A DNA stretch of 64,000 bases, from the NCBI GenBank assembly GCA_002269645.1, contig NIVC01000031.1, forward strand, positions 1,054,001 to 1,118,000. The letters run 5' to 3'. The notes under the pieces were generated by a model. That model was not told the origin of the DNA. It saw nothing but the letters and a program-made list of their open reading frames with translations, and did no database searches. Source of the stretch: Macrostomum lignano (lineage: Eukaryota). Position numbers and translations under genes: made by a program. Shown here piece by piece: positions 5,323 through 64,000 of the stretch (positions are counted from its first letter, which is position 1; each line of letters begins with the position of its first letter).

Positions 5323-5428
5323 GTAAATCTATTTGAAGCTTTCAAATGGCATATTGAACCTACAGATATGTTAATGGGAAGCGACTACATGACATGAATG
5401 CAGTTCTCAAAGCAAGGCAATATCATAC

Positions 5429-14309: not shown

Positions 14310-15310
14310 CAGGGGACGCCAAACTCCGGCCCTCAGGCCACATGCGGCCTGAGAAGCCTCCCTATCTGGCCCCCAGGTTCCTTTGAAGGTTTACAATAGC
14401 AATCCGACCCGCTTAAGGTTTGTGTCTTTTTAGCTATCTTCTCTAATCTCCTTTCTTCTCGATTCTTCTTTTCTCTTCTCTCCTCTCCCTTCTCTCCTAT
14501 CATATCCTCTTCCTTCTGTTCTCTCCTCTCCCTTCTCTCCTATCCTATCCTCTTTCTTCTCTTCTCTTCTCTCCCTTCTCTCATATCCTATCCTCTTCCT
14601 TCTCTTCTCTCCTCTCCCTTCTCTTCTCTCCTCTCCCTTCTCTCCTATCCTATCCTCTTCCTTCTCTTCTCTTCTCTCCCTTCTCTCCTATCCTATCCTC
14701 TTCCTTCTCTTCTCTCCTCTCCCTTCTCTCCTATCCTCTTCCTTCTCTTCTCTCCTCTCCCTTCTCTCCTATCCTATCCTCTTCCTTCTCTTCTCTCCTC
14801 CCCCTTCTCTCCTATCCTATCCTCTTCCTTCTCTTCTCTCCTATCCCTTCTCTCCTATCCTATCCTCTTCCTTCTCTTCTCTTCTCTCCCTTCTCTCATA
14901 TCCTATCCTCTTGTTTCCGTTCTCTCCTCTCCCTTCTCTCCTATCCTATCCTCTTCCTTCTCTTCTCTCCTCTCCCTTCTCTCCTATCCTATCCTCTTCC
15001 TTCTCTTCTCTCCTCTCCCTTCTCTCCTATCCTATCCTCTTCCTTCTCTTCTCTCCTCTCCCTTCTCTCCTATCCTATCCTCTTCCTTCTCTTCTCTCCT
15101 CTCCCTTCTCTCCTATCCTATCCTCTTCCTTCTCTTCTCTTCTCTCCCTTCTCTCCTATCCTATCCTCTTCCTTCTCTTCTCTTCTCTCCCTTCTCTCAT
15201 ATCCTATCCTCTTGTTTCCGTTCTCTCCTCTCCCTTCTCTCCTCTCCTCTCTCTTCTCTCTTGTCCTCTCCTCTCATCTCATCTCATCTCATTCCATCTC
15301 TCCTCTCATC
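14310..15310 (+). mobile_element. hAT MITE family 1 copy whose CT tract has expanded into a 43-bp-unit satellite; right end not found
   Basis: Starts CAGGGGACGCCAAACT, preceded by ATCTACAC (nnnTAnnn); hairpin CTCAGGCC-acatgc-GGCCTGAG; core CAATAGCAATCCGACCCGCTTAAGGTTTGTGTCT; then about 870 bp of TCCTATCCTATCCTCTTCCTTCTCTTCTCTCCTCTCCCTTCTC-type units. Confidence 0.75.
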
Positions 15311-16383
15311 TTAATCTTTACACACACGCAAGAAACACGCAGAAATTTATTAATACAATATTAAATTATTTCGTACATTGGATATTGACAACCTGACTAG
15401 CAGGTCAGCACCCTGTAGAAAAATCAGTACCTACATACCATGCACAAAATTAGACACAGAACAAAGAGCAAACAAAGCTTAATCACTTCCTAGATAAAAC
15501 ATGATTATAGTCTTCGTTAGAAGCCCCCCCCAAAAAAAAGAAACGTTTGACACCCCATTGCCCCACGCGCGCGAACGTGACCCTCCCAGAAAAATCAGAT
15601 TTTAAATAAATAATTAATTAACACGAATCCTGAAAAGGGGGGATGTGAATGACAAGACTTCATTTGGCTCCAATCAGTCACTAAAAATTCCAACCCAGAG
15701 ACCCAAGCGAATAAGTCAAAACTGAAAAATTGATGGATAATCTCAATTGCAACAAGATCTAAAGAAACTCAAGCTCATTTTTCATGCTCTTTGTCCAACT
15801 AGCAGAGAATCTATTAAGAAACAAAGACTCCTTCCTTCCTTCCTAACCCATCTTCCCATTAACATGGGGGATATTTCAAGCCTAAAAACCCCCGAGGGGA
15901 GTCTCTTTCTCCCACCTCTTAAGTCGATTACTCAAACTCGAACTCAAAAAGCGAGCCGCCATTCGGAGAGAACCCTGGAACAGCTGGTCGGGTCACGATG
16001 AAACCCCTGCATCACGTGACAAAGAGCGATGCCAGTCTCTCGTTTAGTCATAATTTTTAGTTGTTCCAATGCTAATAAATTATGTCGCATGCTTCTATAC
16101 CGTACACTGTAACAAAATGGCCTTGGAAAGGAAGAAAAAGTTTCAATGGGAATTAGGTATTGATACATGGAATAGAAAACACCCGACTATACTTATCTAA
16201 AGCAATCTCAGCCAACATCTCTATAGAATTATTGCGTCGGGTAACTAGATCTAAAAAACTTCAAATAAGTATATTACTACACTGTAAGGTACTGATGCGA
16301 TTTTGCGGTATTAGTGTGACCTGATGTGTTTTAGTGTGTATCTAAGAATCCCGAAACGTCACAAGACTTTAAATTAGCTAGAG

Positions 16384-40910: not shown

Positions 40911-42637
40911 AAAGAATTGTCATTGATAAAGCAACACAGTCAATCTCTGGTGTTGGGTGTTGCAGCTGCTAAGTTTAATAACAATAAAGTGCACACTGTC
41001 AATCTCCGGGGTTGGGTGTTGCAGAAGCAGCAATGTTATTCTGATAATAATTCTGATTGATTGTTGATACTAAAAAAAATAATACAATAAACGCTGTATG
41101 CATCTGATTCAGTAAAAAATAAGAGAATAATACAAAAAAAATAACTATTGTTTTCAAATAAATAATATAATCAATTCATTGCTCTGAACCTGAGCATCTC
41201 CCCGGAGGGGGGCTAAAATTGCTATAATTGTCTATAGCCAACATTCTCCTTCTTACTTTTCGATCCTCTATTCTGTAATGGAGATAGCTTGAGTTCTTTC
41301 TTTCTGTGGTGTATTGTAGTGTAATAAAATATTAATGACTAAATGAATGAGACCTATGAATAAGAATGAATATAAAAATTGATTTATGAATATTCATATT
41401 GAATTATTGAGATATTGAATTGTAGATACGGTGAATAAGAGAGATTATTATGAATATTAGTTAATCAATTGCGATAAATAACTGTACTAAATACTCTCCC
41501 CGAAGGGGGGTCAACTATTGCCAGTATAAACCTAAATCTGCTCGGGCAAAATTAGTCAGCCCGCAGCAACATCTCTAAAGTTCGAGTTAGTCTATCATCA
41601 GCGCTACGAGAGGCTGGTTGGCGCGTTGAAGGCCAAAAGTAATTTAGTTTATTTAGCAATGTAAAAGTACATGTAGCTACCCCATAGTGTCGCCACTGCA
41701 AGAATCCCCTGCACAAGTCCCATCTGTACCTGCATGGCCAATACGATCGAGTCCCAGCGGTGTCCCTTATCATCGGCTATGACTTCGAGATTGATAGCAA
41801 AAAGACACTCGTTGGCTGGTAAGTGCAAAGCCCCTTCTAGTCGGAAGCCCGATTTCGAAAGCTCCGGTTTGGTGAGCCGGTGCACTGGCTGGTGGCGGCG
41901 GGTTAGTTAATCTGCGGATTAGCTCTACCTTAAAAATTCTCCCTGCTTGTCTCGCCGTCCCTCTCTTTACCCATTGGACCTAGACTGCTCGCCCACAGAT
42001 CAAGCATCACCATACATGTAGATATATTGACTGATATAACTGTACTGTACAATGTATATAGTCCATATATAGGTACAGTTTCATGTGAACTTACATTTAC
42101 TTGTTGTTTCTAGGCAAGAATAATTCGGGGGTACGTATATGCAGTACGCAATATGAGTTAGCTCGTGTACATGTAAATTACATGTATCTGGGGTGACGCT
42201 GGGTAACTAATGGTGATCGCATGAAGTGCCACCATGCGGCTACATGTGAAAGTGTACCCATGTATCTTTCAATTTGTGTCTGCAAGTTCAATCAACTTAT
42301 ACAAATCATGAAGTCGCATTTGGGGTAAAAAATACAGACCAAATTTTTATCTGTGTCGACAGTGTTTCTATCAGCACAAGTTCTCTGCAGTGGTCTTAGA
42401 ATGCTGTGTACGTCATGCTTTAATTGAGCAGTACGTATTTTTGTTACTTTACCCCTGTACATGCACACGAGTAGTCTACAGTTATGGCCGCATTTCCGTG
42501 GCATGATAGTTTAGCTCTCTGTAATGTAAAAAAGAACGATATAGTGTATCGCTCGTCAAAAATCAGAGGCAGTAACACATCCAGCATACTCTGCAACAGT
42601 CTAGATTTTATTTGAGGAAATCGGTAGTAACGGCTCA

Positions 42638-44167
42638 ATGGTAAAACGCAAACGCACGTTTTGTAATGTGCCAACTAATACAAATAGATCGCGGGGCGAG
42701 ACGTATTCGAGGCAAAGCAGAAATATTTGGCTGTTACGGCAAGCTTCCGCTAAAAATCGCTGCACATTTATCATGCCGACGATAGTCCGACTTATTGACC
42801 TGTTTGGATCTCGAGACGACCTTCAGCTCGCCTGCTGTCAAATGGCTCGATCCGCAGCTGAAAACGGAGACGCTTTCACGGCTAGACAGTTTGTCAATGT
42901 TTTGTCAGTCAATCAGAAACTGAACGCTGAAGATATGGACGAGTTTCTACTAGAGCTGATAGTTATTTCGCAACGGAACTGTCGCTGGGAATCGATGGCC
43001 CAGTTCTTAGTAGCTATCGACAATAGAAGTACGAGAAATCATCGTTGCGCAGTCGCGGTTAGAACGCTAGCCATAAATTGCCAATGGGCCGTGGCCATTC
43101 GCGTAATAACGATCATTCAAAATGAAGACCTGAAGCTGCAGTGCGTCTCTGAATTGGCTCAACGGGCAGCCAAGTGGGGCGAGAAAAGAACGGCCTTGAG
43201 AGTTGTTAAACTCGTTTCAGATTTGAAAATTCGGGATTCCGTGTGCATTATTGCAGCAATGTCTGCTAGCGAGAAAGATCGCTGGAGCTTAGTCACTAAT
43301 CTAGTCCACCTCATGTCCGATCCGAACGCCAGAGATGAATTTTGTCGCAAAGCGGCCGCATCAGCGGCGTCACACTGTCGTGACAAGATGGCTGCGTACG
43401 TTAACTTATTGACTGACAAGGAGAAATCAAGTGACATTCGCCTCGAGGACATTGAATGGCCGGCGAAGTTCCAGAGCCAGTGGACTACAGTTATTGGCCT
43501 CGTTAAATCCATAGTTGATGAGAACGTGAGGCTCGATTGCTGTAATAAGATTTGTTCCTATGTTGCTAGTCAAGGCTATGCCGAAGTTGTGTCCAGCATT
43601 CTGAGCATCATCTCGGATCCTAATCATAAGGACCAATGCTGCAGTAACTCTATTAAAGCCGCAGCATCTCAAGGCCATCGGAATGTTGTGCACCAATTAT
43701 TACCAACAATTTCTGATCAACGTCTACAGGAAGAACTACGCGTTTCCATTTTGACCAGATCCGCTTCCGAGTTTAGTAAACCAGAATTTATTAGGCAGCA
43801 ACTCGAAAGTATTTCTGACACAAATCTGAAAGATGAGTGCTGCTCTGGAATCATGAAATCTGCCGCTTCTGTAGGAGACTGGAAGACGAGTAAGTACACA
43901 GCGGGTCTGATAGCAGATCAATCGGTTCGAAGCCATGCCTGCAGCAGCGCTGCAAAGTCTGCCTCTCGACTGGGCGCGTCAGGTGAATTTGATTATTTTC
44001 TAGCGGAAATAAAAGACAAAGGCATTGTTATATTCACCTGCATTGAATCCGCCAAAGCAGCAGCCCATAACTGCAACTGGGAGATGGCTAACCTAGCCAG
44101 GACAACAATCAGCGAACTTCCACTGAAGGATCAATGCAGCGCCGACTTGGCAATTATTGCAGCTACT
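42638..44167 (+). CDS. cGLR fusion, segment 1: about 13 atypical 33-aa alpha-helical (ANK/TPR-like) repeats
   Basis: Periodic unit such as SDPNHKDQCCSNSIKAAASQGHRNVVHQLLPTI; likely start MPTIVRL or an upstream exon. Confidence 0.75.
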
Positions 44168-44178
44168 GTAGATACACT

Positions 44179-45059
44179 CGGCCCAACTGGGAGCAAGCTC
44201 AGGCTGCTGCTAGGAGCATCAGTGAACCAAGCACCAGGGACGCCTGCTGGATTCGCTTGGTCGAGACGGCTACCCGGCAGCGCTCGTGGGATATGGTGAT
44301 CAGCATGGTGCAAGAAGTTTCAGACCAAACGGCTAAAGAGAAGCTCTGCACAGAGGCAGCTAAAGTCGCTGCAGCAAGAAGCCAAATTGAAGTGGTCAAA
44401 CGTTTGCTTCTAGTTATTAGTTGCGAAGCTAGCAAAAACCTTTGCTGCATTGAGGTCGTAAAGGTTGCAATCTCGCATGGCCATTGGAATTTTGTTTTAG
44501 GCATTCTACAATTCGCTGGTCGAAACAAAATAAAGCAGATTTTCAGTCCCGAAAATTGCGAATTCATTTTTGAAGACAGGATGCTGCACGATTTAGTGCA
44601 CAGCGCAATAAGCTGCTCAAATGAGAATAAAATTCCTGCACTTGAGCAGATTCTGCCTCACTTAGCTCACGCGCAACATCTCAGGCTTATGGCCAAGTGC
44701 ATCTCGGATGGCTACGTTCCAATAGTATTTAACCTGCTGCAACACTTGAAACAAATTGACGAACCGATCGATTCGAGCAGCACGTCGCTAATGCTAGCCG
44801 CAGATTCTGGACAGTGCGAATTAGCAGAGCATCTACTCGCTCAAGGCGCATCGGTAAGTGTTCAGGACGAGTTCGGTAGGACTGCGTTGTCTCGAGCCTG
44901 CATTGCTGGTCATATTCGAGTTGCCATGGCGTTGATCGATAGCAGATCAGACATCGAACATCGTGACCGGAACGGACAGAGCTGTGCTCAGTTGGCTGAA
45001 CAATTCCAACATTTTGATGTGCTTAAAAAACTTCAACATCATTTTGGTTCGATTGCGTT
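44179..45059 (+). CDS. cGLR fusion, segment 2: 3 further 33-aa repeats plus about 3 canonical ankyrin repeats
   Basis: TSLMLAADSGQCELAEHLLAQGA, DEFGRTALSRACIAGHIRVAMALI, DRNGQSCAQLA; ends at donor TT|GTAAGT. Confidence 0.85.
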
Positions 45060-45306
45060 GTAAGTTAAACCTTGATTAAATCAACAATAATTATAGGCAA
45101 TTTAAAGTGCTGCAATGTTTCGGATAAATTTTCCTCATTTCTTCCATAGAATTACAGACGAAAGGAAGCAGTACAGACAAGAAACTGAGTTACAAGTTAC
45201 TCAACCAAAGTAAGTGTGTATTCTATTCAGTTTTAAATAGAATTTTGCGGTATTACAGGGTTAACTTGATTTGAAACTCAATTTTCATTTTTGCTCTATT
45301 CTTAAG

Positions 45307-45821
45307 ATTCGCGAAACTTCTAGCTGACGAACAACAAGTTGATGAGAGACTGAGCGAAGATCTGCATCGTCTGCTCAACAATGCTGGCTTCAAGCTCACC
45401 AGGGTACATTTTCAACATGAGGTTGCTGATTCGCTGGAAGAATTAGTTCAGGCATTCACGCAGGAATCACGATACATGACTGGAAGCTACTCTGAAGGCT
45501 GGGGCTTCAGTTTAAAACATTTGAATGGAAAAATAGCGTCAGACTCTGACATCGACTGGACCGTAATTGCTGGTGACGAATTATTCCATCTTGAAGGCGG
45601 CTGTAAATGCGCAGGCGTCGCTAGACTAACATTGGTGGATGGTCATACACAAGTATCAACTATCGTTGGTAAGTTCGAACTCAATTCAGAATTGTCTTTG
45701 AAAGTTCAAGATTTCGATTGTATCGACATAAAACGAAAGAAAGTTAAGTCACTTTCGAACTACCCAGAAAACTTGATTAAAATGACACTGTACTCGAGAA
45801 CTGTGAGTGAAAATGAAGCAA
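45307..45821 (+). CDS. cGLR fusion exon: Mab-21/cGAS-type NTase core
   Basis: Spine-helix-like LSEDLHRLLNNAGF then MTGSYSEGWG...SDSDIDWT (GS plus DxD); preceded by a 60-bp linker exon 45150-45209. Confidence 0.8.
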
Positions 45822-46793
45822 GTACGTCGTACGTGCTTTATCCAAAGTTTATCAAACTAAATAAGTGAAAGCGTAAAAATACAGTTTTTATGTGCAAACA
45901 TTTCACAAAAATTTACTTTGTATAACGACTAAATTAAACTTCAGCGAAACTTTGCTTGCTTACCCGCATAGACAACTGAACTACTAGGCCACTATATATC
46001 GGGTGATTTCAATGCAAGTTTTTTTGACCGAATTTATCCGTTCTCTGGTTGTAGATTTACATTTTTCAAGGTTCTGAAGAGTATACGTTCCTTATCGGCC
46101 TCCAGCTCTACGAAAACTTTCTAAGAGAAAAGTCTAGCTTATTTCTACTCGTAATTCAGTTGTTTATGTCGAAGAAACTTCTTAAACAGCATTGAAGGAA
46201 ACCGCTAACTTGTAGCTCGTAGCTACTAGCTTAATTTGCAACCAGCAGAAGTCGATCGGTACATTAAATTTTAACCTGGTGCGTGAAAACCGAAAATTTA
46301 AAACAAAAAACTGAGAAAATTCTGTCCTTCGGTTGTTGACAATTAAAAACCGACAGACTGACAGTTTGTACTCGCATATTTCGTACCTTTCGAAGTCAAA
46401 GAAGAACTAAAGAGATATTCGGGATTGACTGCTGCTAATAACTTCTTGGTCGGGCCATGGAGCAAATAAAACACATGAAATTACAGTTAGAGATCAAGAG
46501 CATAGATAAAATAAACAGCTGGCGGCAAAATAATATACAAATAACGAGTTATACCCTCCCACTTTGGAGATAGCTATAGAAAATAATTAGTGAAGGATCT
46601 CAAACCGACAACTAAAAGTATTGTTGTTTAATTTAAATTAGCACACTATACCATGGCTGTTTTCTTATTTTATCGTGCCTTCTGTAAGCTTCTGTTAATT
46701 TTTTATTTTATCTGAAAACAAAGTCAGGCATCAAAATACACCCACCCGTACGCTGAAAATCGTATAAAATTAAATGCAAACTGCTAACTTCAG

Positions 46794-48219
46794 GTGGCAA
46801 TCCGGCTCTGAGAATTGACGGATGCGGCGTTCGACCAGCCCAGGACACATGCCAAGCGTTTCCATGCTGTAGCAGCCTTTGAGAAGAGAAAATTCGTCAG
46901 TTAATCGCTCCTCAGCCAGTCAATGTGCATCTAGTCAGAGCTTATAGACCCAATAAATCAAACGAATTGAGGATTAGCTTCAGCCTGCACGAGAAGCAAA
47001 TTATGAGGAGCTTGAACTCAATTCAAGGCCAATTGTTCATTCTCCTCAAATTCATATTTAAGCATCAGCTACCAAAAGAATTCAATACGCGAGGGCTGAA
47101 AACCTATCACGCAAAAACCTTGCTTTTCTTTATGATGGAGAAGTATATAGCTCTGATACTACTGCTTGGCAAAGCTTCAACATTGTTACCTTGCTCAAGG
47201 AGTCTCTGGATCTCATGCTTCAGTTTCTTGATTGGAGCCATTCTCGGGACGTTTGCATGCCGCACTTCTTTATGGAAAACGTTTCACTTTACTTTAAGAA
47301 TGCTGGCACAACTTGTGGAGACTTTAATTCTACTAAATCAAAAGTTAGACGTTTCTTGTCGAAGCTGCGAAATGACGTAAACCTTGTTGTCGATTCCATC
47401 CGAAATCATGTCGATACGCTCACTTCAAATTGCTTCTTCTTTCACCCGTTCACTCTGCTGCCACTGACCGGTCAGCCAAACTCAGTTTCCAACGTAGATC
47501 CAACCAGCACGACAAAGCTCTTAAAAGCCTATCGAACAGTTCAAAGGTGCATCCATGATCTTCAATCAGAAACTTGTCAAATCGACCTTCTACTTTCTAG
47601 GCTAAATTCACTACCAGAGGTATTTCAATGTACGCGGATGTGCCTGACAATAATAGCCCTGTTAAGACAGTCAAATCGAGCTGAAGCAGCCAGGTTAGCG
47701 CAACAACTTGTCAGTCATAGGGTGCAAAGAGCGTGGAGTTCAAGTGGAAGCCTTACAGCAAGCCTGCTTGACGATCGTGGTCCCGATTGGGCCTGGAGAT
47801 TCTGCATTCCCAGCCTAAAAGAGGCTCAGTTTCACTTCTTACCGGCCATCACTGGTTCTCTCATCTCAGCAAGGCTTTCAGTTGCTGGGGCCTCACATTT
47901 GTACTTTAATTTCCGTTGCATTGGCTGGAGCCTGCAAGCTGAGCTGCTTCAGAAAAACGATTATAACGTTCAAGATTGGTACGATGAGATGCAAGAGGAC
48001 GCCGATCTAGAAGAGCTCCTAGTCCTGGCTCATTACAGTGACTGTCCGGAGCATCTCCAGTTCAGTTTGGAGCAAGCTACTATTAAGGAGAACGGCAGCC
48101 TTTCGATGACTATTCGGGATCGAAAAAAACTCGGGGTTATTGCGAAAAAGCTTGAGATGCTTCAAGCTGAGAAGTCAAACGTCAGCAGTGAGTTGGAAAT
48201 TCAATGCGACAGTCTGTAG
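46794..48219 (+). CDS. cGLR fusion last exon: third acidic residue, Mab-21 C-lobe and C-terminal helical domain (contains a stop and a frameshift)
   Basis: Branch point ctaac plus cag| acceptor; PAQDTCQAF, LRISFSLHEKQIM, GLKTYHAKTLLFF, CMPHFF, WAWRFC, HLYFNFRC. Confidence 0.8.
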
Positions 48220-50395
48220 TTTAATGCCAGGCACGCTCGTACGGCTTGAGATTTATCAAGCTTAAAAAATACGAACTTTTGTTTGTACTCGTACATACGC
48301 TGAAGATTTTCTGTTAAGAGTTCTATTTCGATATCGTTTAAATATACATCTGATGAAGATGTATAGATGCATTTAGTACTTAAAGTACTAAAGAAAGAAG
48401 ATTAGCTGCAGTAAAGTACTTGAGGTAGTTCTACAGCAGTTAGAAGTCTAGAAACTTTTTAGAATCAACAAAAATTTTTCTGAATTTGGACTGTCAGCCT
48501 TTTAGCTCCAATTGCTTTTAGGACTTAAAAAATCTGAACATCTAAACCAAAACACATTCAGGACACACTAAAACGCATAAAGACACACTACAAAGACACA
48601 TCAAGAAACACTGATACATCACGGGGACTCTAAGACGCGTCAAGACGCACCAAAACAAACAAAGACACAACAAAACATTTAAAAGGCAATCTAAGATCCA
48701 CAAAGACGTACCAAAACATACACGGCTACTATGATGAGATCATGGAGAATTCACTTGCAGTGTGCTTCGTACTTTTGCTTGGCTAATTGTTTACAGTAAT
48801 TCGAATTCATGAATGATTATACTAATTTTTCCATAATCTTGAAGCTCATCGCTTTAATTGACTGTGCAATATGTTTAATTTGATTCTGCTATTAAATTGA
48901 TATTACTGAAGTGGTTCTTATTTATTTACGAATATACGAACATGTAATATAATACGAACATGTACTATAAACTACATGTATAGTACATGTCATTTTACTG
49001 CTTTCTATTTGCGTGATTTAAACAAACTGTTACAAGTAACTAGACAATTTTTACGCGAATGCATACTTTTGGGACGAATTAAACCTGTCGCAGCGTAGCA
49101 GACCTTGGCACTCAAAAACGAACATAGCAGAATATATATGCATATAGCTGTCCAAGAAAGTGATTATATTTAGCTTGCTGAGTAGGCCAAGTTTCTTAGA
49201 GTAGCTAGGAGAAAACAAGTTATTAAAAATATATCAAAGCAATAGATAGTAGTAGCGAATTATGATTGGTTGATAGTTACGTGGGCGCTGGGCAAGATTA
49301 TCGATTGGCTAGAAATTTATCACATGCTGATATATAAAACCCAATTGCAAGAATGTACACACAAGTTACACAAAATAGGATACATTTACGTATTAGTCTA
49401 CTGACAGTAAAAACAATGACATTTCACAACTAATTCAATCCCGTCACACTTTAGTGACAGCTACTAGATTAGATGTATCGGAAGATATGTCACTCAAATA
49501 AATTTGAGAAAAATCAAAGCGTCTTCTCCTTTTCAATAGTTTGTCTGCGCAGCGTCATTAAAATTCAATATAGAAACGTAACTTTTCCTTTAATTCCTGT
49601 AATGACTCAGACTAGCTATTTAGTTTGGCGAGAGAAACGATGCGCTTTTAAAATGAGCCGACTGCTCAATTCAATATATTTATAGGGACGAGAGTATTGC
49701 GTAATAAGAATATTGCTACGAATTCATCGACCAAGCCAGCCGTACATTATTATTTCCGCGCAGAGCGTACACTACAATTACTTAGGGGTTAGTGGCCTCA
49801 GGAGCACATCGAGCATTAAAGTCCGGTTGACTCCTGGTTGGGGTTTCAAGTTTTTCCTCCTGTCTTCAGTTTTTAAATAAATTTCTTGTTAAATTTGAGT
49901 CGGAGGCAAGCCTTGAGTATGTAAAACAGCTGGTATGAAGATGCTAATATCGGGTTAACGCTTCCATGAATATATATTCGAGACAACTAAGCTATTTAAA
50001 TGATTATGATAAACAAAAAATCAAACATTAATCACACCAAAAGAAATTACTACCAATGGAACCATTCAGCTCTTAATGTGATTAATTCTTCTATATATAG
50101 ATACATATCGTAAAAATTGTAAAACGTAAATTCGCTACTGACTGGGTTACACTACAATGGTGACACTTTTATTAACGTTTCATTACAATCAGTACAGAAG
50201 GGATGCAGCGATAAGATAAACATCGCTTCAATAGATGAATATACAAAAATAGACAAAGGGGTGGAAAAGTGCAATCGAGTATATACGTCCGACTACTTTT
50301 GAATCACCTGAAAAATATATGGTTTAGGGCTGTTTAGAAATTAAGTGACTTTGGACTTTTAAAAATGAAGTCGATCTTTAGTCTTCTAAAATCGA

Positions 50396-51111
50396 TTATA
50401 GAATAGAGCAGTCGCCCTCTCTCTCTCTTTCATGTACGTGGACTTCGATTTCCCTTCGTTGCTGATATTGCATTTCCAACCTTTGATTTCTAAGCTCCTG
50501 TTCCAATGTTTCTCGCATTCTCATGCGTAGTACCTCCATTGCCATACCGAACTCACGAGCGTGCATTTCCAGCATCATCTTAATCATGAACAGATGCTGA
50601 ATTTGTTGGATCTGCGACTGCTGTGCCACTTGCAGTTGCTGGGTCTGGCGTAGAGCGTCAGAAATCATCACCATCTGGTTTTGCGCGTCTGACTCAGTTT
50701 CCTGATCCGTTTTTTTGAAGCGCTTTTTGTTGTGCTGTGCAACTTCATCGATTAGTTCTAACAAGTCATTGATCTGCTGCTGTCTTAACTCGGAGTTGGC
50801 ATCGCTCTTGTCATTACTCAGCACGGTGACCCTATCGCCCACTTTCGACAGCAGATCTCTGAACTTGGGAATCGCAGGGCATAGTTTATTTTTCAGATAT
50901 TCTTGAAAGCCTCTCTTGTTGCCATTAAGCTTTTCACAATGCGTGAAGACAATGATCGCTCTTTCAAAAGCTTTTGGGCCAAACATTTGACTGCATCATT
51001 GGCAGCATTTAGTTCTTCCTCAGTCGCCCTGACATCGTATCTTAGGACAATCAGAAAGGCATCCACTCCTTTTGGACAATCGTCAAGCGCACTTGTCAGG
51101 TTTTCAGGCAC
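50396..51111 (-). pseudogene. AIG1/GIMAP-family GTPase, C-terminal two-thirds, ending in CaaX (CSIL); one frameshift; G1-G3 exon not found
   Basis: CPKGVDAFLIVLRYDVRATEEE..MFGPKAFERAIIVFTHCEKL..LLSKVGDRVTVLSN..QINDLLELID matches the AIG1 switch-II-to-helix region; a 1-nt deletion in an A-run at 50986-50988 joins the two ORFs. Confidence 0.8.
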
Positions 51112-51984
51112 TTTATTTACGAACGTATGAAGTTTAATCGAAGCATGTCGTATATGGAACTACTCACCGCGTGTGCTACAGTCGTAGCAGCTGTGCCAAA
51201 CAAAAAGGAGACTTGGTTTGCAAATAATTGTAAGCTTGGACACTTGCAGGTAGATTATAACCGAGCCTGCTTGTACGAGTATAAAGCTTTAGAGCCCACC
51301 CTGACAATTTATAAGAAATATGCGTAAAATCGAGGTAATTCCCAGGTAAATCCAAGGTAATTCAGTGGCTACTCCGCGGTAACTCCACTGTAACTACGCA
51401 GTCACTCCTCCGGGCTGCCATATGCTGCTGTTTCAATAAAAGGAAAAAGTCATAATGACTTATCTTAATGACTTAATGACGAAAGGAACTTAATCTTATT
51501 TAAAATTTGATCTTTATCCTATTTATTTAGTTAGCGCATTTCACGTCGTATTACTAATAGCTGCATTCGAAAACTCTGCCAGTGTCATGATCGATAAAAT
51601 TTGAATACAGAAAATGTCGCATTAAAATTCTGCGCCTTTTAGATTTACACATACATAGGCAAAATTATTTAAATTTCTGCACTGTTTCTGCATTAATTCT
51701 GGCTTCTAGTACATGTAGAGCTAGCAAATTCACAATTCTTTTACAGCTTGTATTTTACACAACCCTTTTAGGCTTCTTGATACATATTTGGCTTAAACTA
51801 CATGAAGACTGGCTCGTGACCGACCGTGCCCCCCTCCTCAACTTAATGATATCCCTTCCGGCAAATCATGACATCGCCTCCCGTTAAGCAACATCAACTT
51901 GGAAGAGGCTGGCCATCTGAGGGAGGCCAGAGTGTTAAATTTGATTTTTATGCTCTGAGGACCGACAGGCTTCCGATCGACCAA

Positions 51985-54295: not shown

Positions 54296-56786
54296 TCACT
54301 GGCAGTCTAGAAACATGTGCTCCAGAAGTTCGTCGGTATCAGCTCGACTCTTAGGATTCCTCACAACGCAGCGACGATAGAAATCCCTCAGACTGTCGGA
54401 GACACCATTTGGAAGATCTGGCATAGGATTTTTCTGGATTCGGAATCCGACTTGCTGCCAACCCAGCTCTGAATTGGGCGGCTCCATCGTTAGCATTTCG
54501 TAAATTGTGCAGCCAAACGCCCATACGTCCGATTTGGGTGAGTACACAGTTTTGCCTTCCTCGTTGAACAGCTCTGGAGCCATGAAGTTGACGGTGCCGC
54601 TGAGACTTTTGGTGCTACCAATGCTGTGGAAGATTTCTTTGGCGAGGCCGAAATCGATCAGTTTAATGATGCCTTTGTGGCTCAGCATGATATTGCTGCA
54701 CTTAATGTCCCTATGCAGCGTCACAGGATCGCGGCTGTGCAGGTAGTTGAGAGCGACGCAAATCTGTGAATTTAATAGTTTTTTAAAAAGTAAAGCAAGA
54801 ATTAACATTTAGCTACATGTAGCTTGCAGGAAGAGGCTACCGTTGCCTACAGCCAGATAATGATGCATCCATCTGGAGGCACAGCAGCCGTTATACTGCA
54901 CACACTGTTAAAAAGGCAAGGTCTCCATTTTTGCTCAATCTCTTGGTAAACATTCTGTACCCTTCAAATTGAAAGCAAACTAATCGCAGAATCGAATCCC
55001 TAACGCGATTACTGTTCGCTACTCTCCGACAATGCTAATTCACATTTTTAGTATGAAACCTACCTGCATAGAAAAATCCCTGACGGCGCATTCATCAAAC
55101 GGTTTCCGCTGACGTCGTATCAGATCAGTGAGACTATGGCCGGCGATGAGCTCTGTAAAGATGCACAACTTGTGGTTCCTGGTGCGCTGAAACTTGAGAA
55201 ACTTCAAAATGTTTGGATGCCGAATGCTTCTCAGAACAGCAATCTCCGCGTTCTCCTGTTCAACCGCTTGGTCTAGAAGCTTCAGGTTACCCACAATTTC
55301 CAGCTGAATAATCTTGACGGCCACAGTTTGCCGCTTGTCGGTGAAGACTTTGAACACCTGGCCGAATCCGCCTTCGCCAATTTGTTGCTTATTGCCTTCG
55401 TCGTCGTAGAGGAAGTCCCAATTCGTGAAATCTGGGTCCAATGGAAGCTTGCGTCTGAATAAAAATGTGAAACGGAATGATTTAGGCCTGTTCAAAACTT
55501 ATTTAAAGCAAATTTTCTCCTGAAATTGTAACGCAGCTGTAATATGCGTTATTGGTTGTATTTTCAGTACACACCAAATACGAGTACAAACCTAACTAAG
55601 GAGCTCCGATTGGACGCAGGACTCCGGTCTTCTTTGGCTTCATATTGCTGCTCCTCCTGTTTTTGCTCCTGCTGCTCCTCCTGTTTCTGCTCCTGCTGCT
55701 CCTCCTGTTTTTGCTCCTGCTCCTGCTGCTCCTCCTGTTTCTGCTCCTGCTCCTGCTGCTCTTCCTGTTTTTGCTTTTGCTGCTGCTCCTCCTGTTTTTG
55801 CTCCTGCTCCTGCTGCTCCTCCTGTTTTTGCTCCTCTTCCTGCTGCTCCTCCTGTTTTTGCTCCTGCTGCTGCTCCTGTTTCTGCTCCTGCTGCTCCTCC
55901 TGTTTTTGCTCCTGCTCCTGCTGCTCCTCCTGTTTTTCTAGCTGCTGTTCTTCTTGCTGCTGCTGCTCCGTTCGCTGCTGCATTTGCAAGCAGGCCATCT
56001 CTTGTATCGGTTCGGACTGCTTCTCCGACTGTTTTTCCTTTATTTCAACGATTAACTGCAGTATCTGCTCCCCGTGCAGAGTGTTTTCTTGCGCATAGTC
56101 GGCCAAAGTCTTTCCGCTAACATCGACGAGATTGAATGCTGAGCAATCCAATGAATTGAAGATGAAGCGGAGCGAGTCCACATCTTGATATTGAGCAGCC
56201 AAGTGGGCAGGGGTCGTGCCATTTGAGTCTTTAGTCAATAAGCAGGACGAATCAAGAAGTGAGACCAACATTTTGAGGGAAGAACTTTGCCGTACATTCA
56301 TAGCAGCAAAGTGAACAGCATTCTGGTTGCTGCTATTAGTCTGACTAAAGCAGTCGCATCCTAGGATTGTCTGGAAGAGCTGCAACGAATCCTCATCTTG
56401 CTTCAAAGCGGCGAGATGTATTGGAGTATTGCCGAATTGGTCGCGAACAGATAAACAATCGACACCGCATTGCTCAACAAGCCACTTAAGAACAGAATTT
56501 GTCACTTCATTTAAGGCGGCATTGTGAAAAGCGTTGCGACCGTTGTTGCCCGTCTGATAGAAGCAGTCACTTCCAACGAGTTGGTGGGCAAACCTCATCC
56601 ACGACTCGTCTTGGTATAGAGCGGCTAGATGCACCGGAGTGTTGTTTAATTTGTTCAAGCAGGTGAGGCAGTCGGGTCCAAGCCGGTAGAAGTCGATGCG
56701 AGTCTTTGGCTCGAATGGCAGCTGCCGCGAGCGATTTTTGCATCGAAATTTGGTAGGCCATGCTCGAAATGTGTCAAGAAAGCTGC
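54296..56786 (-). CDS. Ankyrin repeat / Q-E coiled coil / Ser-Thr kinase (STE/MAP3K-like); exons ~56786-55592, 55454-55064, 54763-54296; 5' end unresolved
   Basis: ANK motifs NTPVHLAA, RNAFHNAA, NTPIHLAA, NAVHFAA, TTPAHLAA; EQEQKQEEQQ repeat; kinase GEGGFG, VAVK, HRDIKCSN, DFG, APE intact. Phase-2 intron 55591-55455 and phase-0 intron 55063-54764 keep the frame. Confidence 0.88.
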
Positions 56787-57004
56787 TGCTAGCTATCAGG
56801 CGGGTGAGAAAAGTAGAATAAAAGTGGGTCGTCTCGGGCTTTTATATGCCTATTTAAGTCTCTCACTATACTAGTATCTCATACGTGAAGTAAGAGCGTG
56901 CATACCTGTCTACCCTAAATAGAACCGTTTTCAGAAACAGAGGCTGGACAGAAATGCATTACAAAATTACAGTGTACAGTGCTGCTTAAAGCCAGTGCAA
57001 CAGT

Positions 57005-58194: not shown

Positions 58195-59665
58195 AAAACG
58201 GGTGCAGTAGATCCTCTCTAGTCTTTCACTGGCCTTTTTAATCTTTTCAAAGTCCTGAGTGTCCATGGCGACGCGTTTTTAATCTCCGATCTCTGTCATC
58301 TGTCGCTACACAGAACTCTACGTGGTCGCGGCAGTCGCTTTAGTGGGCAAGAGTGAGCAGCTCCTCCAAGTCTGGGTCTTCTTTCAACTCATCCAACCAC
58401 GGGTCAAAATTGATCGGTGAGCAATCGTGCAGCAGTTCCGCTTGAAGACTCCAGCTCAGGCAGCGGAAGTTCACGTACAGATGGGAGGAGCGAGGCTGCA
58501 ATAACCTCGCTGTCAACAGAGTCTGAGTAAACTCAGGTAGGTAAGGGAAGAGAGGCGGACAGTCACAAGGAAGGCAGAATCTCCACGCCCAGTCTGATTC
58601 AGTGGGTAGACTTGTCCATTGAATCCATTTAGTTTCATTTGGCATCAAGCCTAGTGTAATATCCTGCATCTGAAGCTGTTTTAACAAGTTCACAGCCTGC
58701 TCAAATTCTCCAAATTTGAGATGCGCAATTGCGGTCAAGCATAGGGTGGCGCACTGGCACCACTGCAGCGAGTGCAAAAGATTCAGCTGCCTCCAGCAAC
58801 GAGACTTTGCATCTAGAAGAGTGTCTCTGTTGTTTGACTCTGACTGCAATTCACTAATACAATTGTTGACCAACCTGTATACATCAGCGTACTTTAAATA
58901 GTGCTCCTCCTCATCAGTTGCTTCTCTGATCTGAGCGACATCAAATAAAGTCCTCAGTGGAAGCAGAGTGAATGGCTAAAAGTAAAATTTCTCTGACTGC
59001 AGCGGTCTCACGAGTTTTCTTAGCTGCTCGACCACTTCACTGACATCTCTTCAAAGCTCGCTAAGTCGGTCTCGAACCCTCGTTTTTGTGTTGTCAAAGT
59101 CACGGCCGATTCCAGCATTCTTAAAGTAGAATGGAACGTCAGAAGTTAAAAAGTGCGGCATGCACTCATCAGGTAAGCTGCTTGAGTCCATTATGACACC
59201 ATCATGTCTAGTGCCTCTTTTAGTAGAACGATCAAATTTTGGAACTTCCAAGCTAAGGTACTAACTAGTTCTGTGCTTCTCAAGCATAAAGAACATCAGA
59301 GTCTTTGCATGATAAGCCTTTAGTCCATGTGTGTCCAGAAGGAGCGGTAAGTACCTCTTAAAAATAAACTTAATGACAGCAAACAGCTGACCCTGAACTG
59401 CACTCAGTTGCCTCATAATTTGCTTTTCATGAAATTCTGATGGCTAACGCTGCCGCTGACGATGCAGGCACCCTACCGGCGAGGACAGGCGCGCACTCGG
59501 CATTTCGTCGACTGTCTGCTGGCTGACGCTGGCGCCCCGGACTCTGCCGGGGGAGCAGCCTATGTTCGCACCCTGGCCTTGAGACGCGCCCTGTGACACT
59601 AGAGACTATCCAGTGTACTTTGTTGCTGTGTTGTTGTTTTCATGGAAGCTGAAGCTGTATTCTAG
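58195..59665 (-). pseudogene. Second Mab-21/cGLR pseudogene (C-lobe and C-terminal domain only)
   Basis: FHEKQIMRQLSAVQGQLF, GLKAYHAKTLMFF, ECMPHF, PFTLLPL, WAWRFC, HLYVNFRC, DPDLEELL are collinear with 46925-48219; several stops and frameshifts; NTase core not found upstream. Confidence 0.88.
59434..59640 (+). mobile_element. 5'-truncated RTE insertion inside the second cGLR pseudogene
   Basis: LTMQAPYRRGQARTRHFVDCLL matches the RTE C-terminus; TTG tail; flanking TTTTCATGAA (59424-59433) / TTTTCATGGA (59637-59646) read as a TSD. Confidence 0.8.
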
Positions 59666-60365: not shown

Positions 60366-62840
60366 CTAGCAAGTATCCACAAACGGAGTCAGAAGCTGTA
60401 GCACAACTTGACCATGTTCTGTGGGCGAAGCCTCAGCGAACTCGCAGCGGCTACCACCGCAGTAGGAGCCGCCGCCGCCTCCGGCCTCGATATTGTTCAC
60501 CCCGGCCCCGCCTCCGCTGAAACCACCACCGCCGCCGGCTGCTCCGTACTTGCTAGGCTTGTCGAAGCCACCGCTACCGCCGCCGCCGCCGAAGCCGCCG
60601 TCACCGATGTTGCCGTCTCCAGAGACACCACCAGTCCAGCCTTTGGCCAGACTGCCGCCACTATCACCGTCGCTGGAGCTTCTCCTTGGATTGTGTGCCG
60701 TACCAAGCCAGCCGGCGCCACAGCCGCCATGGAACTGGTCGTTTGGTGTAGCGCTTGGATTGTTGTATCCGGGACTCCCAAGGTTGCCACCGAATCCCGT
60801 GGTTAGTATAGTCGAAGAGTTGCTGATGCCACCGTACGAGTTGCTGCCGTAGACTTTGTGTAGAGCGTTCAAGCCTAGAGTTTTGAGATGACAAATTTTT
60901 TTATTTGAGACGAGTGATTTTAGCACCTTTTGCAATATTTTTACTAGCAAAATTTCAAATACTGTTTATAGTCCTCTTGAAGTTTCGACGTTTTTTGACC
61001 GTCAAAATCAGTGAAAAAGAATGACATAAAATTGAGAAAACGTTTTTGTGACGTTTTCTGTGGCTTCACTTGATCTTACGCACAACATTGTTGCAAGCTG
61101 TAAAGACCTATAGTTCATTACAGAGTGCCGTAGCGTCTTTTTAGAGTTCACAGGCGGTCTGTATTCAAAGATGGTTTATGCTTGCACTAGGCTTTTATTG
61201 TAACACTTAAGTGACGATAAAATATGCTGTCAGCAATGTGTGCTACAGTCGATTTTGCTATTATTTCATCACTGGTTGCTAAAACTAACGACGATCTAGC
61301 ATCTAGCTCGTAGTATCTGATGGCTGTCTGTAGAGGCAGAATCATAAAAGCTACACCAAGCTCGTCACATTTTTTTCAAGTGAAAAACCTCGAGCTTTTT
61401 TAAAACACTGTTTTAATTTAAAGCAGGATTTCTCAGCTCTCATTCAATCTCCGTAGCTAAACAGTATGGAAAAAAGCGAAGACCCCAGTAAAGTAAAGAC
61501 CCAAAGAAACTTTCCATCAAACATAGACGAGGCACCGCCGCCACCGCCGGCCGCCATCAGCAATCCGCTGTCGTTTGCTCGGTACACAAAGCTGCCGCCG
61601 CCGCCTCCGCCGCTAGCAGAGTCGCTTGTCGCGGTGGTGCCCGCCTGTCCAACAACGACACTCAAAGCTGTGCCAGCACCAATAACGAAGCTTCCAGCGA
61701 TGGCGGAACCGTTACCCCCGATCTTGCCGCAACAATCTGACCCTCCGCCTCTGGCGCCAGAAATTTCAATTCGATAGCAACCGGCCAGTTCAAATTGGAC
61801 GCGCTGCACAAAGCCTCGGCGGCCAACGCTGGAATCTAAATAAAAAATAAGAATATTTAATTTCTAAAAAAACTGTTAGCTTAATCAACGAAATTCAACA
61901 CTCAGTAAAGCTCTGGATCATCAAACTGCAATAGATGTCTTGGGGCTTCTAGTTCAAAAAGTTTTTGATTTCAGTCGGTTTTGTCGGTAGCCTTACTCCG
62001 GCGTAGTCATTCCGGCACTGAATTTGATGCTTGCATTATTCGAGAGTAACTAATCGAGTAAAATCTTCTCTGTCAACATGCTCAGTGCGTAGAACTCAGG
62101 GACGTAGGCTTGAAAATGAATTTTAATTGAATTATAATTTTGAATGATCCCTTGGCGTCACTCTGAAATTTCAATACTCAAACGTAAAAAAACTTTTCGA
62201 ACAAAATCCACTTAGCGTTACAATTTTCAGAAATGCTTGGAAGTAATGTTGTTTACCGGTAGAGCATTAATATATAATAGCACTATACTCTAGTCCTGTA
62301 TGGATTTTGCTTGCAATTTACTTATAATTATAGATTAGAAAATAAATGTAGAAAAATCAATAATATTTTAAGACTCCACTTACTGCTAAAAGTGACCGTA
62401 CTGTTGACAACTTTCGAAATGTTAAACTGTCTGTCTCGAATGATGGCGTCAAAATTTCCAACCTTCCATATTTTGGCTCCAATTTCGAAGCCTAACCGAC
62501 GTTGCTTGTGACTCTCGGCTGGGCCAGCGTTTTTTGACGCATCGTTGACAATCAAGAGTTGGCAAAAGCTGCTGGTCTCAAAGACAACGACAGCAGAGCA
62601 TGCTCGAATTCGACAGGCCATCAAGCATTCTGCCTTCGACGCTAGATTTATAACATTGACGACTTCACTGCTGACGGACGAGTCAATCAGCAGAGATTGC
62701 TTGGATGGGATGTACTTCAAGCTGGGACAGTCAGATGGCAGAACTGTGTGCGGGTTCACGACTGTGGCTGTGAGGTATGCGGCTGCTTCTGTGAGTGCAA
62801 CAGAGAAAATTAGAAATAAATTTTTTTCAATAGTACTCAT
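60366..62840 (-). CDS. Secreted PAN/apple-domain plus ALK/LTK-type glycine-rich domain protein (possibly damaged)
   Basis: Signal peptide and ECLMAC..CSAV..CQL (62840-62390); YRIEISGARGG, VVVGQAG, GGGGGSFVY, LMAAGGGGG (exon ~61835-61515); GGFGGGGG, GGGGGFSGG, GGGGGSY (60874-60366). Donor at 61514 reads GAAAGT; the intermediate exon near 62000-62110 could not be phased. Confidence 0.72.
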
Positions 62841-64000
62841 TCTCCTTTAGTTTCGAGCGATGAAGATCAAAATAAATCTGTTGCTGTTGCTGCTGTTGAA
62901 ATCCAAGCAATATATAAATGTAGCCAAGAGAAAGCATTCAGTTTGTCAATCATTCTGTAACCAGGAAGGCAGCAATATTAACATCTGCCGGATGTGCTTG
63001 CTCTTGCACTTTTGTTTGCATTTTGTTTGAACTCTTTGCAAAAGGAAATTGCTCGTACTGTTCATCAACCGTACATTACAGTAAAAAACTTTTTTGTTCA
63101 AATTTGTATCAACAGACTGCAGGGTGAGGGTGGCCCAGCCCTGCAACAAGTCCGCATCAAAGTTTCCAGGCGTTCAATTCTGTGGTAACACCTTTTTTGA
63201 ATAAGAGATTGAAGACTCACAATGCTTTATAATCGCTGGAGATTATCGTCAGGGAGGGGGGATTGCCCACCCTGACGATTGTCGAATAAACAGCAACGCA
63301 GGCACACGAAATTTAAAAAGAGCACGAACAGATTTTTTGCGCACCTTCTCAAACAAGAATCAAGTCGCCAGCCCTCTGGACCGTCGAGGTATTCGACGAT
63401 TGTGCCAGAAGGTCGGATTTTTCCCGAAAGCGTCAGTGAATTCAATAAACCTCTGTGTGCCAATCAGCACTGCGCCTCAGTGCAGCCTTGCCAAGACTCC
63501 AAATTTCATCAGCACGTCGACCACATGTGTATGAATCAGCTCTGACTTCGTTGGTCACTGGTCTTCACCCAGGCGAAGCTTGTGGACCTTCAACAGGTGG
63601 CACCAGGTGACTGTCGTAACCCTGTTGCGAATTCCTTCAGTTTCGTTGATTAAGCCAGTGGGCATGAACCTCAACTGCTGGACATCCTCAGCTGGTCTCT
63701 CAAGCATTTTGTCATCACCCTGTAACAGTTTACACTTTATTTCATTTAAAAAAATCACTGCACTTTGACCACTCTTCTATCTTAGCAACACTGTTTCACG
63801 ATTTCTTGCTCGTTTCCTGTTTCGCAAATTTCCACAAAGCTGCGCTTTCAACTCGGTTACATTGGGACTTCCCGCTGTGTGCACTGCACGCAAAAGCAGA
63901 GGAGATAATTGGCAGATAGGTAGGGATACAGGGATGGATGCGTAGTCTATCTGCCTTTCTCTCTCTCTGCTTCAAGCTCCAGGTTACAAAGGAATTTCCG

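What the first reader, a model, noticed from the sequence alone, without database searches (positions are those of the whole stretch)
42638..48219. Giant repeat-sensor cGAS-like receptor: ~16 helical repeats + ankyrins spliced in frame to a Mab-21 NTase
Seen: three canonical introns join, with matching phases, an N-terminal solenoid to an NTase core that has GS, DxD (DSDID) and a third Asp (QDT), followed by the Mab-21 C-lobe; the repaired product is about 1,400 aa. Known: Mab-21/cGLR enzymes, like cGAS and OAS, make nucleotide second messengers. Inference: the repeats act as a ligand-sensing or autoinhibitory module, giving an NLR-like sensor-to-cyclase architecture rather than a nucleic-acid-activated cGAS. 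This copy is damaged, so the point of interest is the family.
Basis: partly seen in the sequence, partly recalled or inferred. Interest (0 to 1): 0.85.

Follow-up and report, generated by a model that had tools for sequence, protein, structure and literature searches.

The report
Broken ankyrin-cGLR gene copy in flatworm
This is a damaged, unannotated copy of a large flatworm (Macrostomum lignano) gene family that joins ankyrin-type repeats to a cGAS-like nucleotide-signal enzyme; the family and its architecture were already catalogued in 2023, so the locus is real but not new.

Summary
On the + strand, four exons (42638-45059, 45150-45209, 45307-45668, 46794-48219) join in phase through three GT..AG introns. 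They encode about 1,425 aa: 16-17 degenerate 33-aa ankyrin-like repeats, canonical ankyrins, a Mab-21/cGAS-type nucleotidyltransferase (MTGS-X20-DIDW-X52-QDT) and a conserved C-terminal domain of about 260 aa with no known fold. The copy carries two frameshifts and one in-frame TGA at a conserved Cys.

The window is Macrostomum lignano contig NIVC01000031.1:1,054,001-1,118,000. The family is a large expansion seen almost only in this species: 91 clusters at 50% identity score E<=1e-30. An annotated paralogue has the same four-exon structure.

A paralogue model matches only MAB21L1, cGAS and MB21D2 structures. The family profile hits cGLR1 and cGAS sequences in the PDB. The catalytic residues are kept in 86 of 97 family domains.

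Li et al. 2023 already classed this family as cGLRs, listed its ankyrin fusions, and cloned five M. lignano cores, including my P0005. None is among their 15 active enzymes.

Verdict: an unannotated pseudogene of a known but functionally untested ANK-cGLR family. The "repeat sensor" idea remains plausible and untested.

The parts
42638..45059 (+). Exon 1. It holds a basic N-terminus (MVKRKR...), 16-17 degenerate 33-aa Cys-rich ankyrin-like repeats (aa ~60-624), a linker and 2-3 canonical ankyrin repeats. The ATG at 42638 is the first in the open frame. An upstream exon is not excluded.
   Evidence: ORFs; repeat HMM; Pfam Ank_2 E=1e-17; weak homology to the N-termini of P0026 and P0023.
44092..44296 (+). 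Lesion 1. This interval contains a shift from frame 1 to frame 0, equivalent to a 1-nt loss or a 2-nt gain. Repeat periodicity places it near 44177, inside one repeat unit.
   Evidence: The overlapping open frames end and start here. The repeat register continues across the shift.
45060..45149 (+). Intron 1 (90 nt, GTAAGT...TAG). The codon it splits has two bases in exon 1 and one in exon 2.
   Evidence: The paralogue P0005 has a small intron (about 84 nt) at the corresponding junction.
45150..45209 (+). Exon 2, a 60-nt micro-exon that forms the linker between the ankyrins and the NTase.
   Evidence: In-phase joining. P0005 has a 42-nt micro-exon at the same place.
45210..45306 (+). Intron 2 (97 nt, GTAAGT...AAG).
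   Evidence: P0005 has an intron of about 99 nt here.
45307..45668 (+). Exon 3, the NTase N-lobe. It contains MTGS (the activation-loop G-S) and DSDIDW (the two metal-binding Asp).
   Evidence: G-S and D-x-D are invariant in alignment A1. tblastn to P0007 gives 48% identity.
45669..46793 (+). Intron 3 (1,125 nt, GTAAGT...CAG). It lies at the same protein position as the 17.1-kb intron of P0005.
46794..48219 (+). Exon 4. It holds the third catalytic Asp (RPAQDT), the Mab-21 C-lobe (RISFS..EK, GLKTYHAKT, CMPHFF), a conserved C-terminal domain of about 260 aa (FHPFTLLPL ... DWAWRFC ... HLYFNFRC ... DLEELLVLAHYSD), and the stop codon TAG at 48217-48219.
   Evidence: For the C-terminal domain.
46880..46882 (+). 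Lesion 2. An in-frame TGA replaces a Cys codon that is conserved in the closest paralogues.
   Evidence: No SECIS or any other Rfam match was found in the window.
47147..47165 (+). Lesion 3. A second shift from frame 1 to frame 0, lying between ...FFMMEKY and SSDTTAWQ...
   Evidence: tblastn HSPs switch frame at 47119-47146.
58207..59494 (-). A second, truncated and decayed copy of the same family. Only the part from the ...EKxIM motif to the C-terminus remains, with several stops and frameshifts. It is about 60% identical to annotated paralogues.

Best explanation
The locus is an unannotated, recently disabled paralogue of the Macrostomum lignano ANK-cGLR family.

Shown for the family. Intact members are single polypeptides. 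They have a variable N-terminal ankyrin-type solenoid, a Mab-21/cGAS-fold nucleotidyltransferase with a complete G-S / D-x-D / D active site, and a family-specific acidic C-terminal domain.

Inferred mechanism for intact members. The NTase makes a nucleotide second messenger, either a cyclic di- or oligonucleotide or a linear 2'-5' or 3'-5' product. The fast-evolving solenoid controls it by binding a ligand, most probably a protein, or by holding the enzyme off until that ligand arrives.

This copy. As assembled it cannot make the full protein. Translation from the first ATG would stop at 44297, after 553 aa of repeats only.
For: Shown:
- The in-phase four-exon model carries three lesions.
- The window is M. 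lignano NIVC01000031.1.
- No database protein is more than 55% identical to any part of the locus, so it is not annotated.
- The copy keeps 70 of 77 family-invariant residues, which points to recent decay.
- The annotated paralogue P0005 has the same exon structure.
- The top 45 Foldseek matches of a paralogue model are all MAB21L1, cGAS or MB21D2, with probability 1.00 and target-normalised TM-score 0.32-0.52.
- The family profile hits cGLR1 (8gjy, E=3e-6) and cGAS (about 1e-4) among PDB sequences.
- The next relatives outside the family are true Pfam Mab-21 + Mab-21_C proteins.
- The catalytic residues are kept in 86 of 97 family domains.
- Li et al. 2023 curated this family as cGLRs and listed the ANK fusions.

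Inferred:
- A sensor or regulator role for the solenoid. It rests on the much lower identity in the repeats (22-23% against 44-55%) and on the variable repeat number.
Against: Both frameshifts are equivalent to a 1-nt loss, the typical error of a long-read assembly. I believe, from memory only, that this assembly is long-read based. I could not check reads, so the two frameshifts may not be real. Only the TGA is a substitution.

No transcript data were available.

No enzymatic activity is known for any family member. The five M. lignano cores cloned by Li et al. are not among their 15 active enzymes. Their individual results are visible only in a figure that I could not read.

The paralogue model has modest confidence (pLDDT 69.9), with the region around the active-site loops below 50.

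I could not test whether M. lignano has a STING or any other receptor for the presumed signal.
Confidence: 0.8

Rival explanations
1. The gene is intact and functional in the animal, and the lesions are assembly or polymorphism artefacts. The locus would then be a bona fide 1,425-aa ANK-cGLR that annotation missed.
For: Both frameshifts are equivalent to single-base losses. The copy keeps 70 of 77 invariant residues and the full catalytic motif. Splice sites and phases are intact.
Against: The TGA is a substitution, not an indel. The neighbouring Robo-like ORF of 1,278 aa in the same window is 100% identical to its annotated protein, with no frameshift. Neither protein set in the database (NCBI PAA..., UniProt A0A1I8...) has a product from this locus.
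Confidence: 0.13
2. The family is not enzymatic. The Mab-21 domain would act as a scaffold or adaptor, as in MAB21L1, MiD49/51, or the crustacean Mab21 proteins reported to activate IKK-epsilon. The ankyrins would simply recruit partners.
For: No flatworm enzyme is among the 15 actives of Li et al.. Some members have lost the third Asp, for example P0033. PMC12928593 describes a non-canonical Mab21 function (abstract only).
Against: G-S, D-x-D and the third Asp are retained in 86 of 97 diverse family domains. That is hard to explain without selection on catalysis. The screen used cores without the ANK module and tested only nucleic-acid ligands.
Confidence: 0.2
3. The ankyrin part and the NTase part are two separate genes, and the junctions are fortuitous.
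For: Exon 1 alone is a long ORF. Without the splice it ends in a stop at 45061.
Against: All three junctions are canonical and in phase. The annotated paralogue P0005 has the same exons and encodes ANK plus NTase in one product. Most database homologues with a complete N-terminus carry both parts.
Confidence: 0.03
4. The TGA at 46880 encodes selenocysteine, since TGA aligned to Cys is the classic selenoprotein signature.
For: The TGA aligns exactly with a Cys of the closest paralogues.
Against: No SECIS or other Rfam family was found anywhere in the 64-kb window at gathering score. Two frameshifts accompany the TGA. That Cys is not invariant across the family.
Confidence: 0.02

Closest known systems
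M. lignano cGLRs curated by Li et al. 2023 (PMC9980059): Table S3 nos. 89-93, e.g. PAA68676.1 / BOX15_Mlig016402g1 (my P0005) and PAA93208.1
   Same: Same species and same family. The NTase plus C-terminal part is 44-55% identical. The order ANK-like repeats, ANK, NTase, C-terminal domain is the same. The four-exon structure is the same.
   Different: This copy is broken and unannotated. It is a divergent lineage, at most 55% identical to any annotated member. It has the most units of the Cys-rich 33-aa repeat among the members sampled: 16-17 against 8 or fewer. That count is biased, because the repeat HMM was built from this copy.
cGAS / cGLR1-type cGAS-like receptors (PDB 6edc, 7uyz, 8gjy)
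   Same: The bilobal Mab-21 NTase fold, the G-S activation loop and an acidic catalytic triad.
   Different: Sequence identity is only 12-20%. The spacer between G-S and D-x-D is 20 residues, at the upper limit of the motif. The family adds an N-terminal solenoid and a C-terminal domain of about 260 aa. No activating ligand or product is known.
ANK-, TPR- and death-domain-fused cGLRs of corals and molluscs (Li et al. 2023, Fig. 1C, 4C, S2A)
   Same: A repeat module, presumably for protein interaction, is fused to a cGLR core. Both occur in strongly expanded gene families.
   Different: They belong to other phyla and other cGLR clades. Those fusions are also functionally untested.
MAB21L1 / MB21D2 (PDB 5eom, 7lt1)
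   Same: These are the best or near-best fold matches.
   Different: Li et al.'s Figure 1 legend says the Mab21L1/2/3 group lacks a predicted functional active site, although their text lists human Mab21L1/L2 among proteins with complete putative active sites. From my own knowledge, MAB21L1 has a developmental role. The flatworm family keeps the catalytic motif.
NLR / STAND-type solenoid sensors
   Same: A variable solenoid sits next to a signalling domain, in a lineage-specific expansion.
   Different: There is no NACHT or NB-ARC ATPase here. The output domain is an NTase. This is a functional analogy only, and it was not tested.

Membership tests
cGAS-like receptors (cGLR), criteria of Li et al. 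2023 | Active-site motif h[QT]GS [X8-20] [DE]h[DE]h [X50-90] h[DE]h. The final curation criterion was G[S/G] plus [E/D]h[E/D] X50-90 [E/D]. | tested here: met
   The window copy reads MTGS - 20 aa - DIDW - 52 aa - QDT. The two positions flanking the third Asp are Q and T, not hydrophobic, so the strict form fails there. The curation form is met. P0005 has the same QDT and is in Li et al.'s curated set.
cGAS-like receptors (cGLR) | Sequence homology across both the NTase core and the C-terminal helix bundle. | tested here: met
   The C-lobe is met directly: Pfam Mab-21_C E=4.4e-5 (24.0 bits against a 24.1 cut-off), and the family profile hits cGLR1 8gjy at E=3e-6 and cGAS at about 1e-4. The N-lobe is met only transitively. 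PF03281 does not hit the window copy. Family-profile hits at about 1e-13 are proteins with Pfam Mab-21 plus Mab-21_C.
cGAS-like receptors (cGLR) | Predicted structural homology to known cGLR or CD-NTase enzymes. | tested here: met
   The AlphaFold2 model of paralogue P0009 has pLDDT 69.9 and pTM 0.69. Its top 45 Foldseek PDB matches are all MAB21L1, cGAS or MB21D2, with E from 2e-4 and probability 1.00. The test was done on a paralogue 47% identical to the window copy, not on the window copy itself.
cGAS-like receptors (cGLR) | Ligand-activated synthesis of a nucleotide second messenger. | not testable with these tools
   This needs biochemistry. The five M. lignano cores in Li et al.'s screen are not among the 15 active enzymes described.
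Ankyrin-repeat proteins | Tandem helix-turn-helix repeats of about 33 aa that match the ANK profiles. | tested here: met
   The canonical repeats at aa ~715-800 score Ank_2 E=1e-17 and Ank E=4e-12. The 16-17 upstream units have the 33-aa period and an A-A-x-x-G-H/W-x-x-V-x-x-L core, but reach only sub-threshold ANK scores (Ank_2 E=0.0019, Ank_KRIT1 E=1.9e-5). I call them 'ankyrin-like'.
Functional protein-coding gene (as opposed to pseudogene) | An uninterrupted reading frame across the spliced exons. | tested here: not met
   The assembled sequence has two frameshifts and one nonsense codon. Whether the frameshifts are assembly errors was not testable.

The most novel reading that the evidence does not exclude
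The Macrostomum ANK-cGLRs would be a working, solenoid-gated class of pattern-recognition enzymes that sense non-nucleic-acid ligands (proteins) through rapidly diversifying Cys-rich ankyrin-like repeats. The conserved acidic C-terminal domain, which has no fold match, would be a new regulatory or effector module. All this would operate in a phylum otherwise reported to have largely lost cGLR signalling. The window copy would represent an extreme 16-repeat lineage of that system.
Probability: 0.25. Interest if true: 0.6.

Novelty: new member of a known kind. Interest (0 to 1): 0.27.

Why it matters
Practical value. The locus adds one unannotated, damaged member, plus a second fragment 10 kb away, to a gene family already curated as cGLRs. 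It is therefore mainly an annotation correction for the M. lignano genome.

Wider interest lies in the family, not this copy:
- At least 91 clusters at 50% identity occur in a single flatworm, whereas most flatworms are reported to lack immune cGLRs.
- The catalytic motif is kept in about 89% of family domains.
- The solenoid evolves fast.
- A C-terminal domain of about 260 aa has no recognisable fold.
- No activating ligand is known.

If the solenoid gates the enzyme, these proteins would be a tractable example of a cGLR that senses something other than dsDNA or dsRNA. M. lignano is a transgenic-capable model (from my own knowledge), so the idea could be tested there.

Tried and rejected
- A direct Pfam scan of the raw ORF pieces gave only a weak Mab-21_C hit (E=0.041).
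- A single-sequence search of the repaired NTase part against PDB sequences found nothing relevant. The profile search did.
- Selenocysteine reading of the TGA: no SECIS or any other Rfam hit in the window. Rejected.
- Recent DNA-level amplification of the repeats: Tandem Repeats Finder found nothing in 42000-48500. The repeats are old and diverged.
- Read-through of exon 3 past 45668 (open to 45865): the extension has no convincing match to the family, whereas the spliced exon 4 is about 60% identical over the junction region. Rejected in favour of the intron.
- C-terminal domain: no Pfam family and no significant Foldseek match (best E=0.64, only TPR-like helices). Its function is left open.
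- An exact-product look-up of the Robo-like ORF failed because the ORF is only part of the annotated protein. The homology search then identified it.
- Literature searches for Macrostomum with cGLR, or Platyhelminthes with STING, returned nothing usable.
- I could not determine whether M. lignano has STING.


Full report
**1. What is in the sequence**

Region 42638-48219 is eukaryotic and about 43% G+C. Three-frame translation of the + strand shows long open segments that change frame.

Joining 42638-45059, 45150-45209, 45307-45668 and 46794-48219 at canonical GT..AG sites keeps one reading frame across every junction. Three sites are GTAAGT donors. The acceptors are TAG, AAG and CAG.

The joined frame is interrupted three times:
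- A shift from frame 1 to frame 0 lies within 44092-44296. Repeat register places it near 44177.
- An in-frame TGA lies at 46880-46882.
- A second shift from frame 1 to frame 0 lies at about 47147-47165.

With one X placed at each lesion, the product is 1,425 aa.

**2. Domains**

An iterated repeat HMM finds 17 matches of about 33 aa, some of them partial, between aa 60 and 624. Their pattern is I-S-D-x-x-x-K-D-x-C-C-x4-K-x-A-A-x-x-G-H/W-x-x-V-x-x-L-L. This is the ankyrin period and the ankyrin second-helix signature, but Pfam ANK models score below threshold there. Two or three canonical ankyrin repeats follow (Ank_2 E=1e-17).

There is no DNA-level tandem repeat, so the array is old.

The NTase part reads MTGS, 20 residues, DIDW, 52 residues, QDT. 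It continues with the Mab-21 C-lobe motifs RISFS..EK, GLKTYHAKT and CMPHFF. Pfam Mab-21_C scores E=4.4e-5, at 24.0 bits against a 24.1 cut-off. PF03281 does not hit.

After the C-lobe come about 260 further residues that are conserved in the family: FHPFTLLPL, DWAWRFC, HLYVNFRC, DLEELLTLAHYSD.

**3. Where the window comes from**

The 1,278-aa ORF at 999-4832 (-) is 100% identical over its whole length to BOX15_Mlig007270g1, a Robo-like Ig/FN3 protein of Macrostomum lignano. That gene's locus overlaps window 1-15632 at 100% DNA identity.

This places the window at GCA_002269645.1, contig NIVC01000031.1, positions 1,054,001-1,118,000. The finding is at 1,096,638-1,102,219.

**4. The family**

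The repaired NTase plus C-terminal part finds 33 proteins, with E down to 1e-168 and 44-55% identity for most. All are from M. lignano except one unnamed JGI fragment. Almost all are annotated with ANK plus Mab-21_C.

A profile of eight diverse members (A1) was scored against 1.84 billion cluster representatives. It gives 985 hits at E<=1e-3, 199 at E<=1e-10 and 91 at E<=1e-30. Every strong hit that I looked up is from M. lignano.

The weaker hits, at about 1e-13, are proteins of about 700 aa from unnamed eukaryotic assemblies. They carry true Pfam Mab-21 plus Mab-21_C, and some also have TPR. This links the family to the Mab-21 superfamily by sequence.

No database protein is more than 55% identical to any part of the window's gene. 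The locus is therefore not annotated, and it represents a divergent lineage of the family.

The annotated paralogue P0005 has the same gene structure:
- a large first exon with repeats and ANK;
- a small intron of about 84 nt;
- a 42-nt micro-exon;
- a small intron of about 99 nt;
- a 121-aa exon with G-S and D-x-D;
- a large intron (17.1 kb) at the same protein position;
- a final exon.

The ANK and NTase parts therefore belong to one gene.

**5. Fold**

The AlphaFold2 model of P0009 with A1 has mean pLDDT 69.9 and pTM 0.69. It is weak around the active-site loops and good in the C-lobe.

A Foldseek search of the PDB gave as its top 45 matches only MAB21L1 (5eom/5eog), cGAS (6edc, 7uyz, 4k98 and others) and MB21D2 (7lt1). 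E-values start at 2e-4, probability is 1.00, and target-normalised TM-scores are 0.32-0.52.

The A1 profile also hits PDB sequences directly: cGLR1 8gjy at E=3e-6 and many cGAS chains at about 1e-4.

The C-terminal domain was modelled alone (pLDDT 73, pTM 0.77). It has no significant match (best E=0.64, TPR-like helices only) and no Pfam family. It is acidic (pI about 5.4-6.4 in most members), whereas the core is mostly basic (pI 8.3-9.1, but 6.6-7.7 in the three most divergent members).

**6. Is it likely to be an enzyme?**

G-S and D-x-D are invariant in A1. Of 97 family domains that cover all five catalytic positions, 86 keep G-S, D/E-x-D/E and the third D/E. This argues for selection on catalysis. 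A few members, such as P0033, have lost the third Asp.

The window copy keeps 70 of the 77 positions invariant in A1, and its seven changes are mostly conservative. The damage is therefore recent, or partly artefactual.

**7. What is already known**

Li et al. 2023 (PMC9980059) defined cGLRs by three criteria, which I tested in the membership table. The paper makes these points:
- 87% of cGLRs are stand-alone enzymes, but some carry TPR or ankyrin modules (Fig. 1C, S2A, Table S2).
- "Most platyhelminthes" have no cGLR other than Mab21-like proteins.
- Table S3 lists five M. lignano proteins cloned for the screen (nos. 89-93). No. 93 is PAA68676.1 / BOX15_Mlig016402g1, identical to my P0005. 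No. 92 is nearly identical to P0010.
- Table S2 lists Ank_2 domains for these accessions.
- The constructs start just before the NTase, so the ANK region was left out.
- The 15 active enzymes come from insects, anemones, molluscs, hydras and corals. I could not read the per-sample result in Figure S3.

I found no later paper on Macrostomum cGLRs in the searchable library.

The family and its ANK-cGLR architecture are thus catalogued, but functionally uncharacterised.

**8. Interpretation**

The best-supported reading is that this is a pseudogene copy of a known ANK-cGLR family. The TGA is a base substitution at a Cys codon conserved in the closest paralogues. There is no SECIS.

The two frameshifts are each equivalent to a 1-nt loss. 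They could be long-read assembly errors, which I could not check. The neighbouring 1,278-aa ORF shows no such error.

A second copy at 58207-59494 (-) is clearly dead: it is truncated and has several stops and frameshifts. Gene death in this family therefore happens in this very neighbourhood.

For intact members, I infer a nucleotide-signal synthase whose activity is controlled by the solenoid. The support is indirect:
- The repeats are 22-23% identical between paralogues, against 44-55% for the enzyme.
- Repeat number varies from none (P0009) to many.
- Isolated cores were not reported active with nucleic acids.

A non-catalytic scaffold role remains a live rival.

**9. Verdict**

It is not new, and it is untested as to mechanism. 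The finding is of low to moderate interest.

Noticed in passing
window 58207-59494 (-): A second member of the same ANK-cGLR family. It is truncated to the C-terminal half and carries several stops and frameshifts. It is about 60% identical to annotated paralogues, closer to them than the main copy is.
   Followed up: partly
window 46794-48219 (aa ~1160-1425 of the repaired product); P0009 aa ~345-600: A conserved, acidic C-terminal domain of about 260 aa follows the Mab-21 C-lobe (motifs FHPFTLLPL, DWAWRFC, HLYVNFRC, DLEELLTLAHYSD). It has no Pfam family and no significant Foldseek match. Its function is unknown.
   Followed up: yes
L002 10001-18307 (NIVC01000031.1:1,392,509-1,400,815, about 290 kb from the finding): P0041 (PAA93319.1, 2,111 aa) is predicted as ANK + Mab-21_C + ANK + a caspase (Peptidase_C14) domain in one product. 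P0035 is predicted as WSC + ANK + Mab-21_C + RING. If these are not fused gene models, they would be cGLR-effector fusions.
   Followed up: no
P0001 (M. lignano, 1,036 aa): It contains a second, partial NTase domain after the first (aa 816-1036). This is a tandem multi-cGLR arrangement like the one Li et al. describe for other species.
   Followed up: no
window 50399-51159 (-): An ORF with an AIG1/GIMAP-type GTPase domain (Pfam AIG1 E=3.5e-13) followed by a coiled-coil, Q-rich tail. This is another immunity-associated family next to the cGLR copies.
   Followed up: no
window 54299-56841 (-): A gene encoding canonical ankyrin repeats, a long Q/E-rich low-complexity stretch and a Ser/Thr protein-kinase domain (HRDIKCSN, DFGLAKE), spread over at least three exons.
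   Followed up: no
window 60369-62846 (-): Exons encoding a PAN-like domain and an ALK/LTK-type glycine-rich domain (Pfam ALK_LTK_GRD E=5e-11).
   Followed up: no
window 996-4832 (-) and ~4930-5400: Part of the Robo-like Ig/FN3 gene BOX15_Mlig007270g1 (100% identity). Just beside it is a minisatellite with a period of about 20 nt, seen as staggered self-hits in BLAST.
   Followed up: partly
window 48540-48720 (+): Just downstream of the stop codon lies a low-complexity A/C-rich stretch built of imperfect 'aaagacac / aaaacac' units. It is not explained.
   Followed up: no
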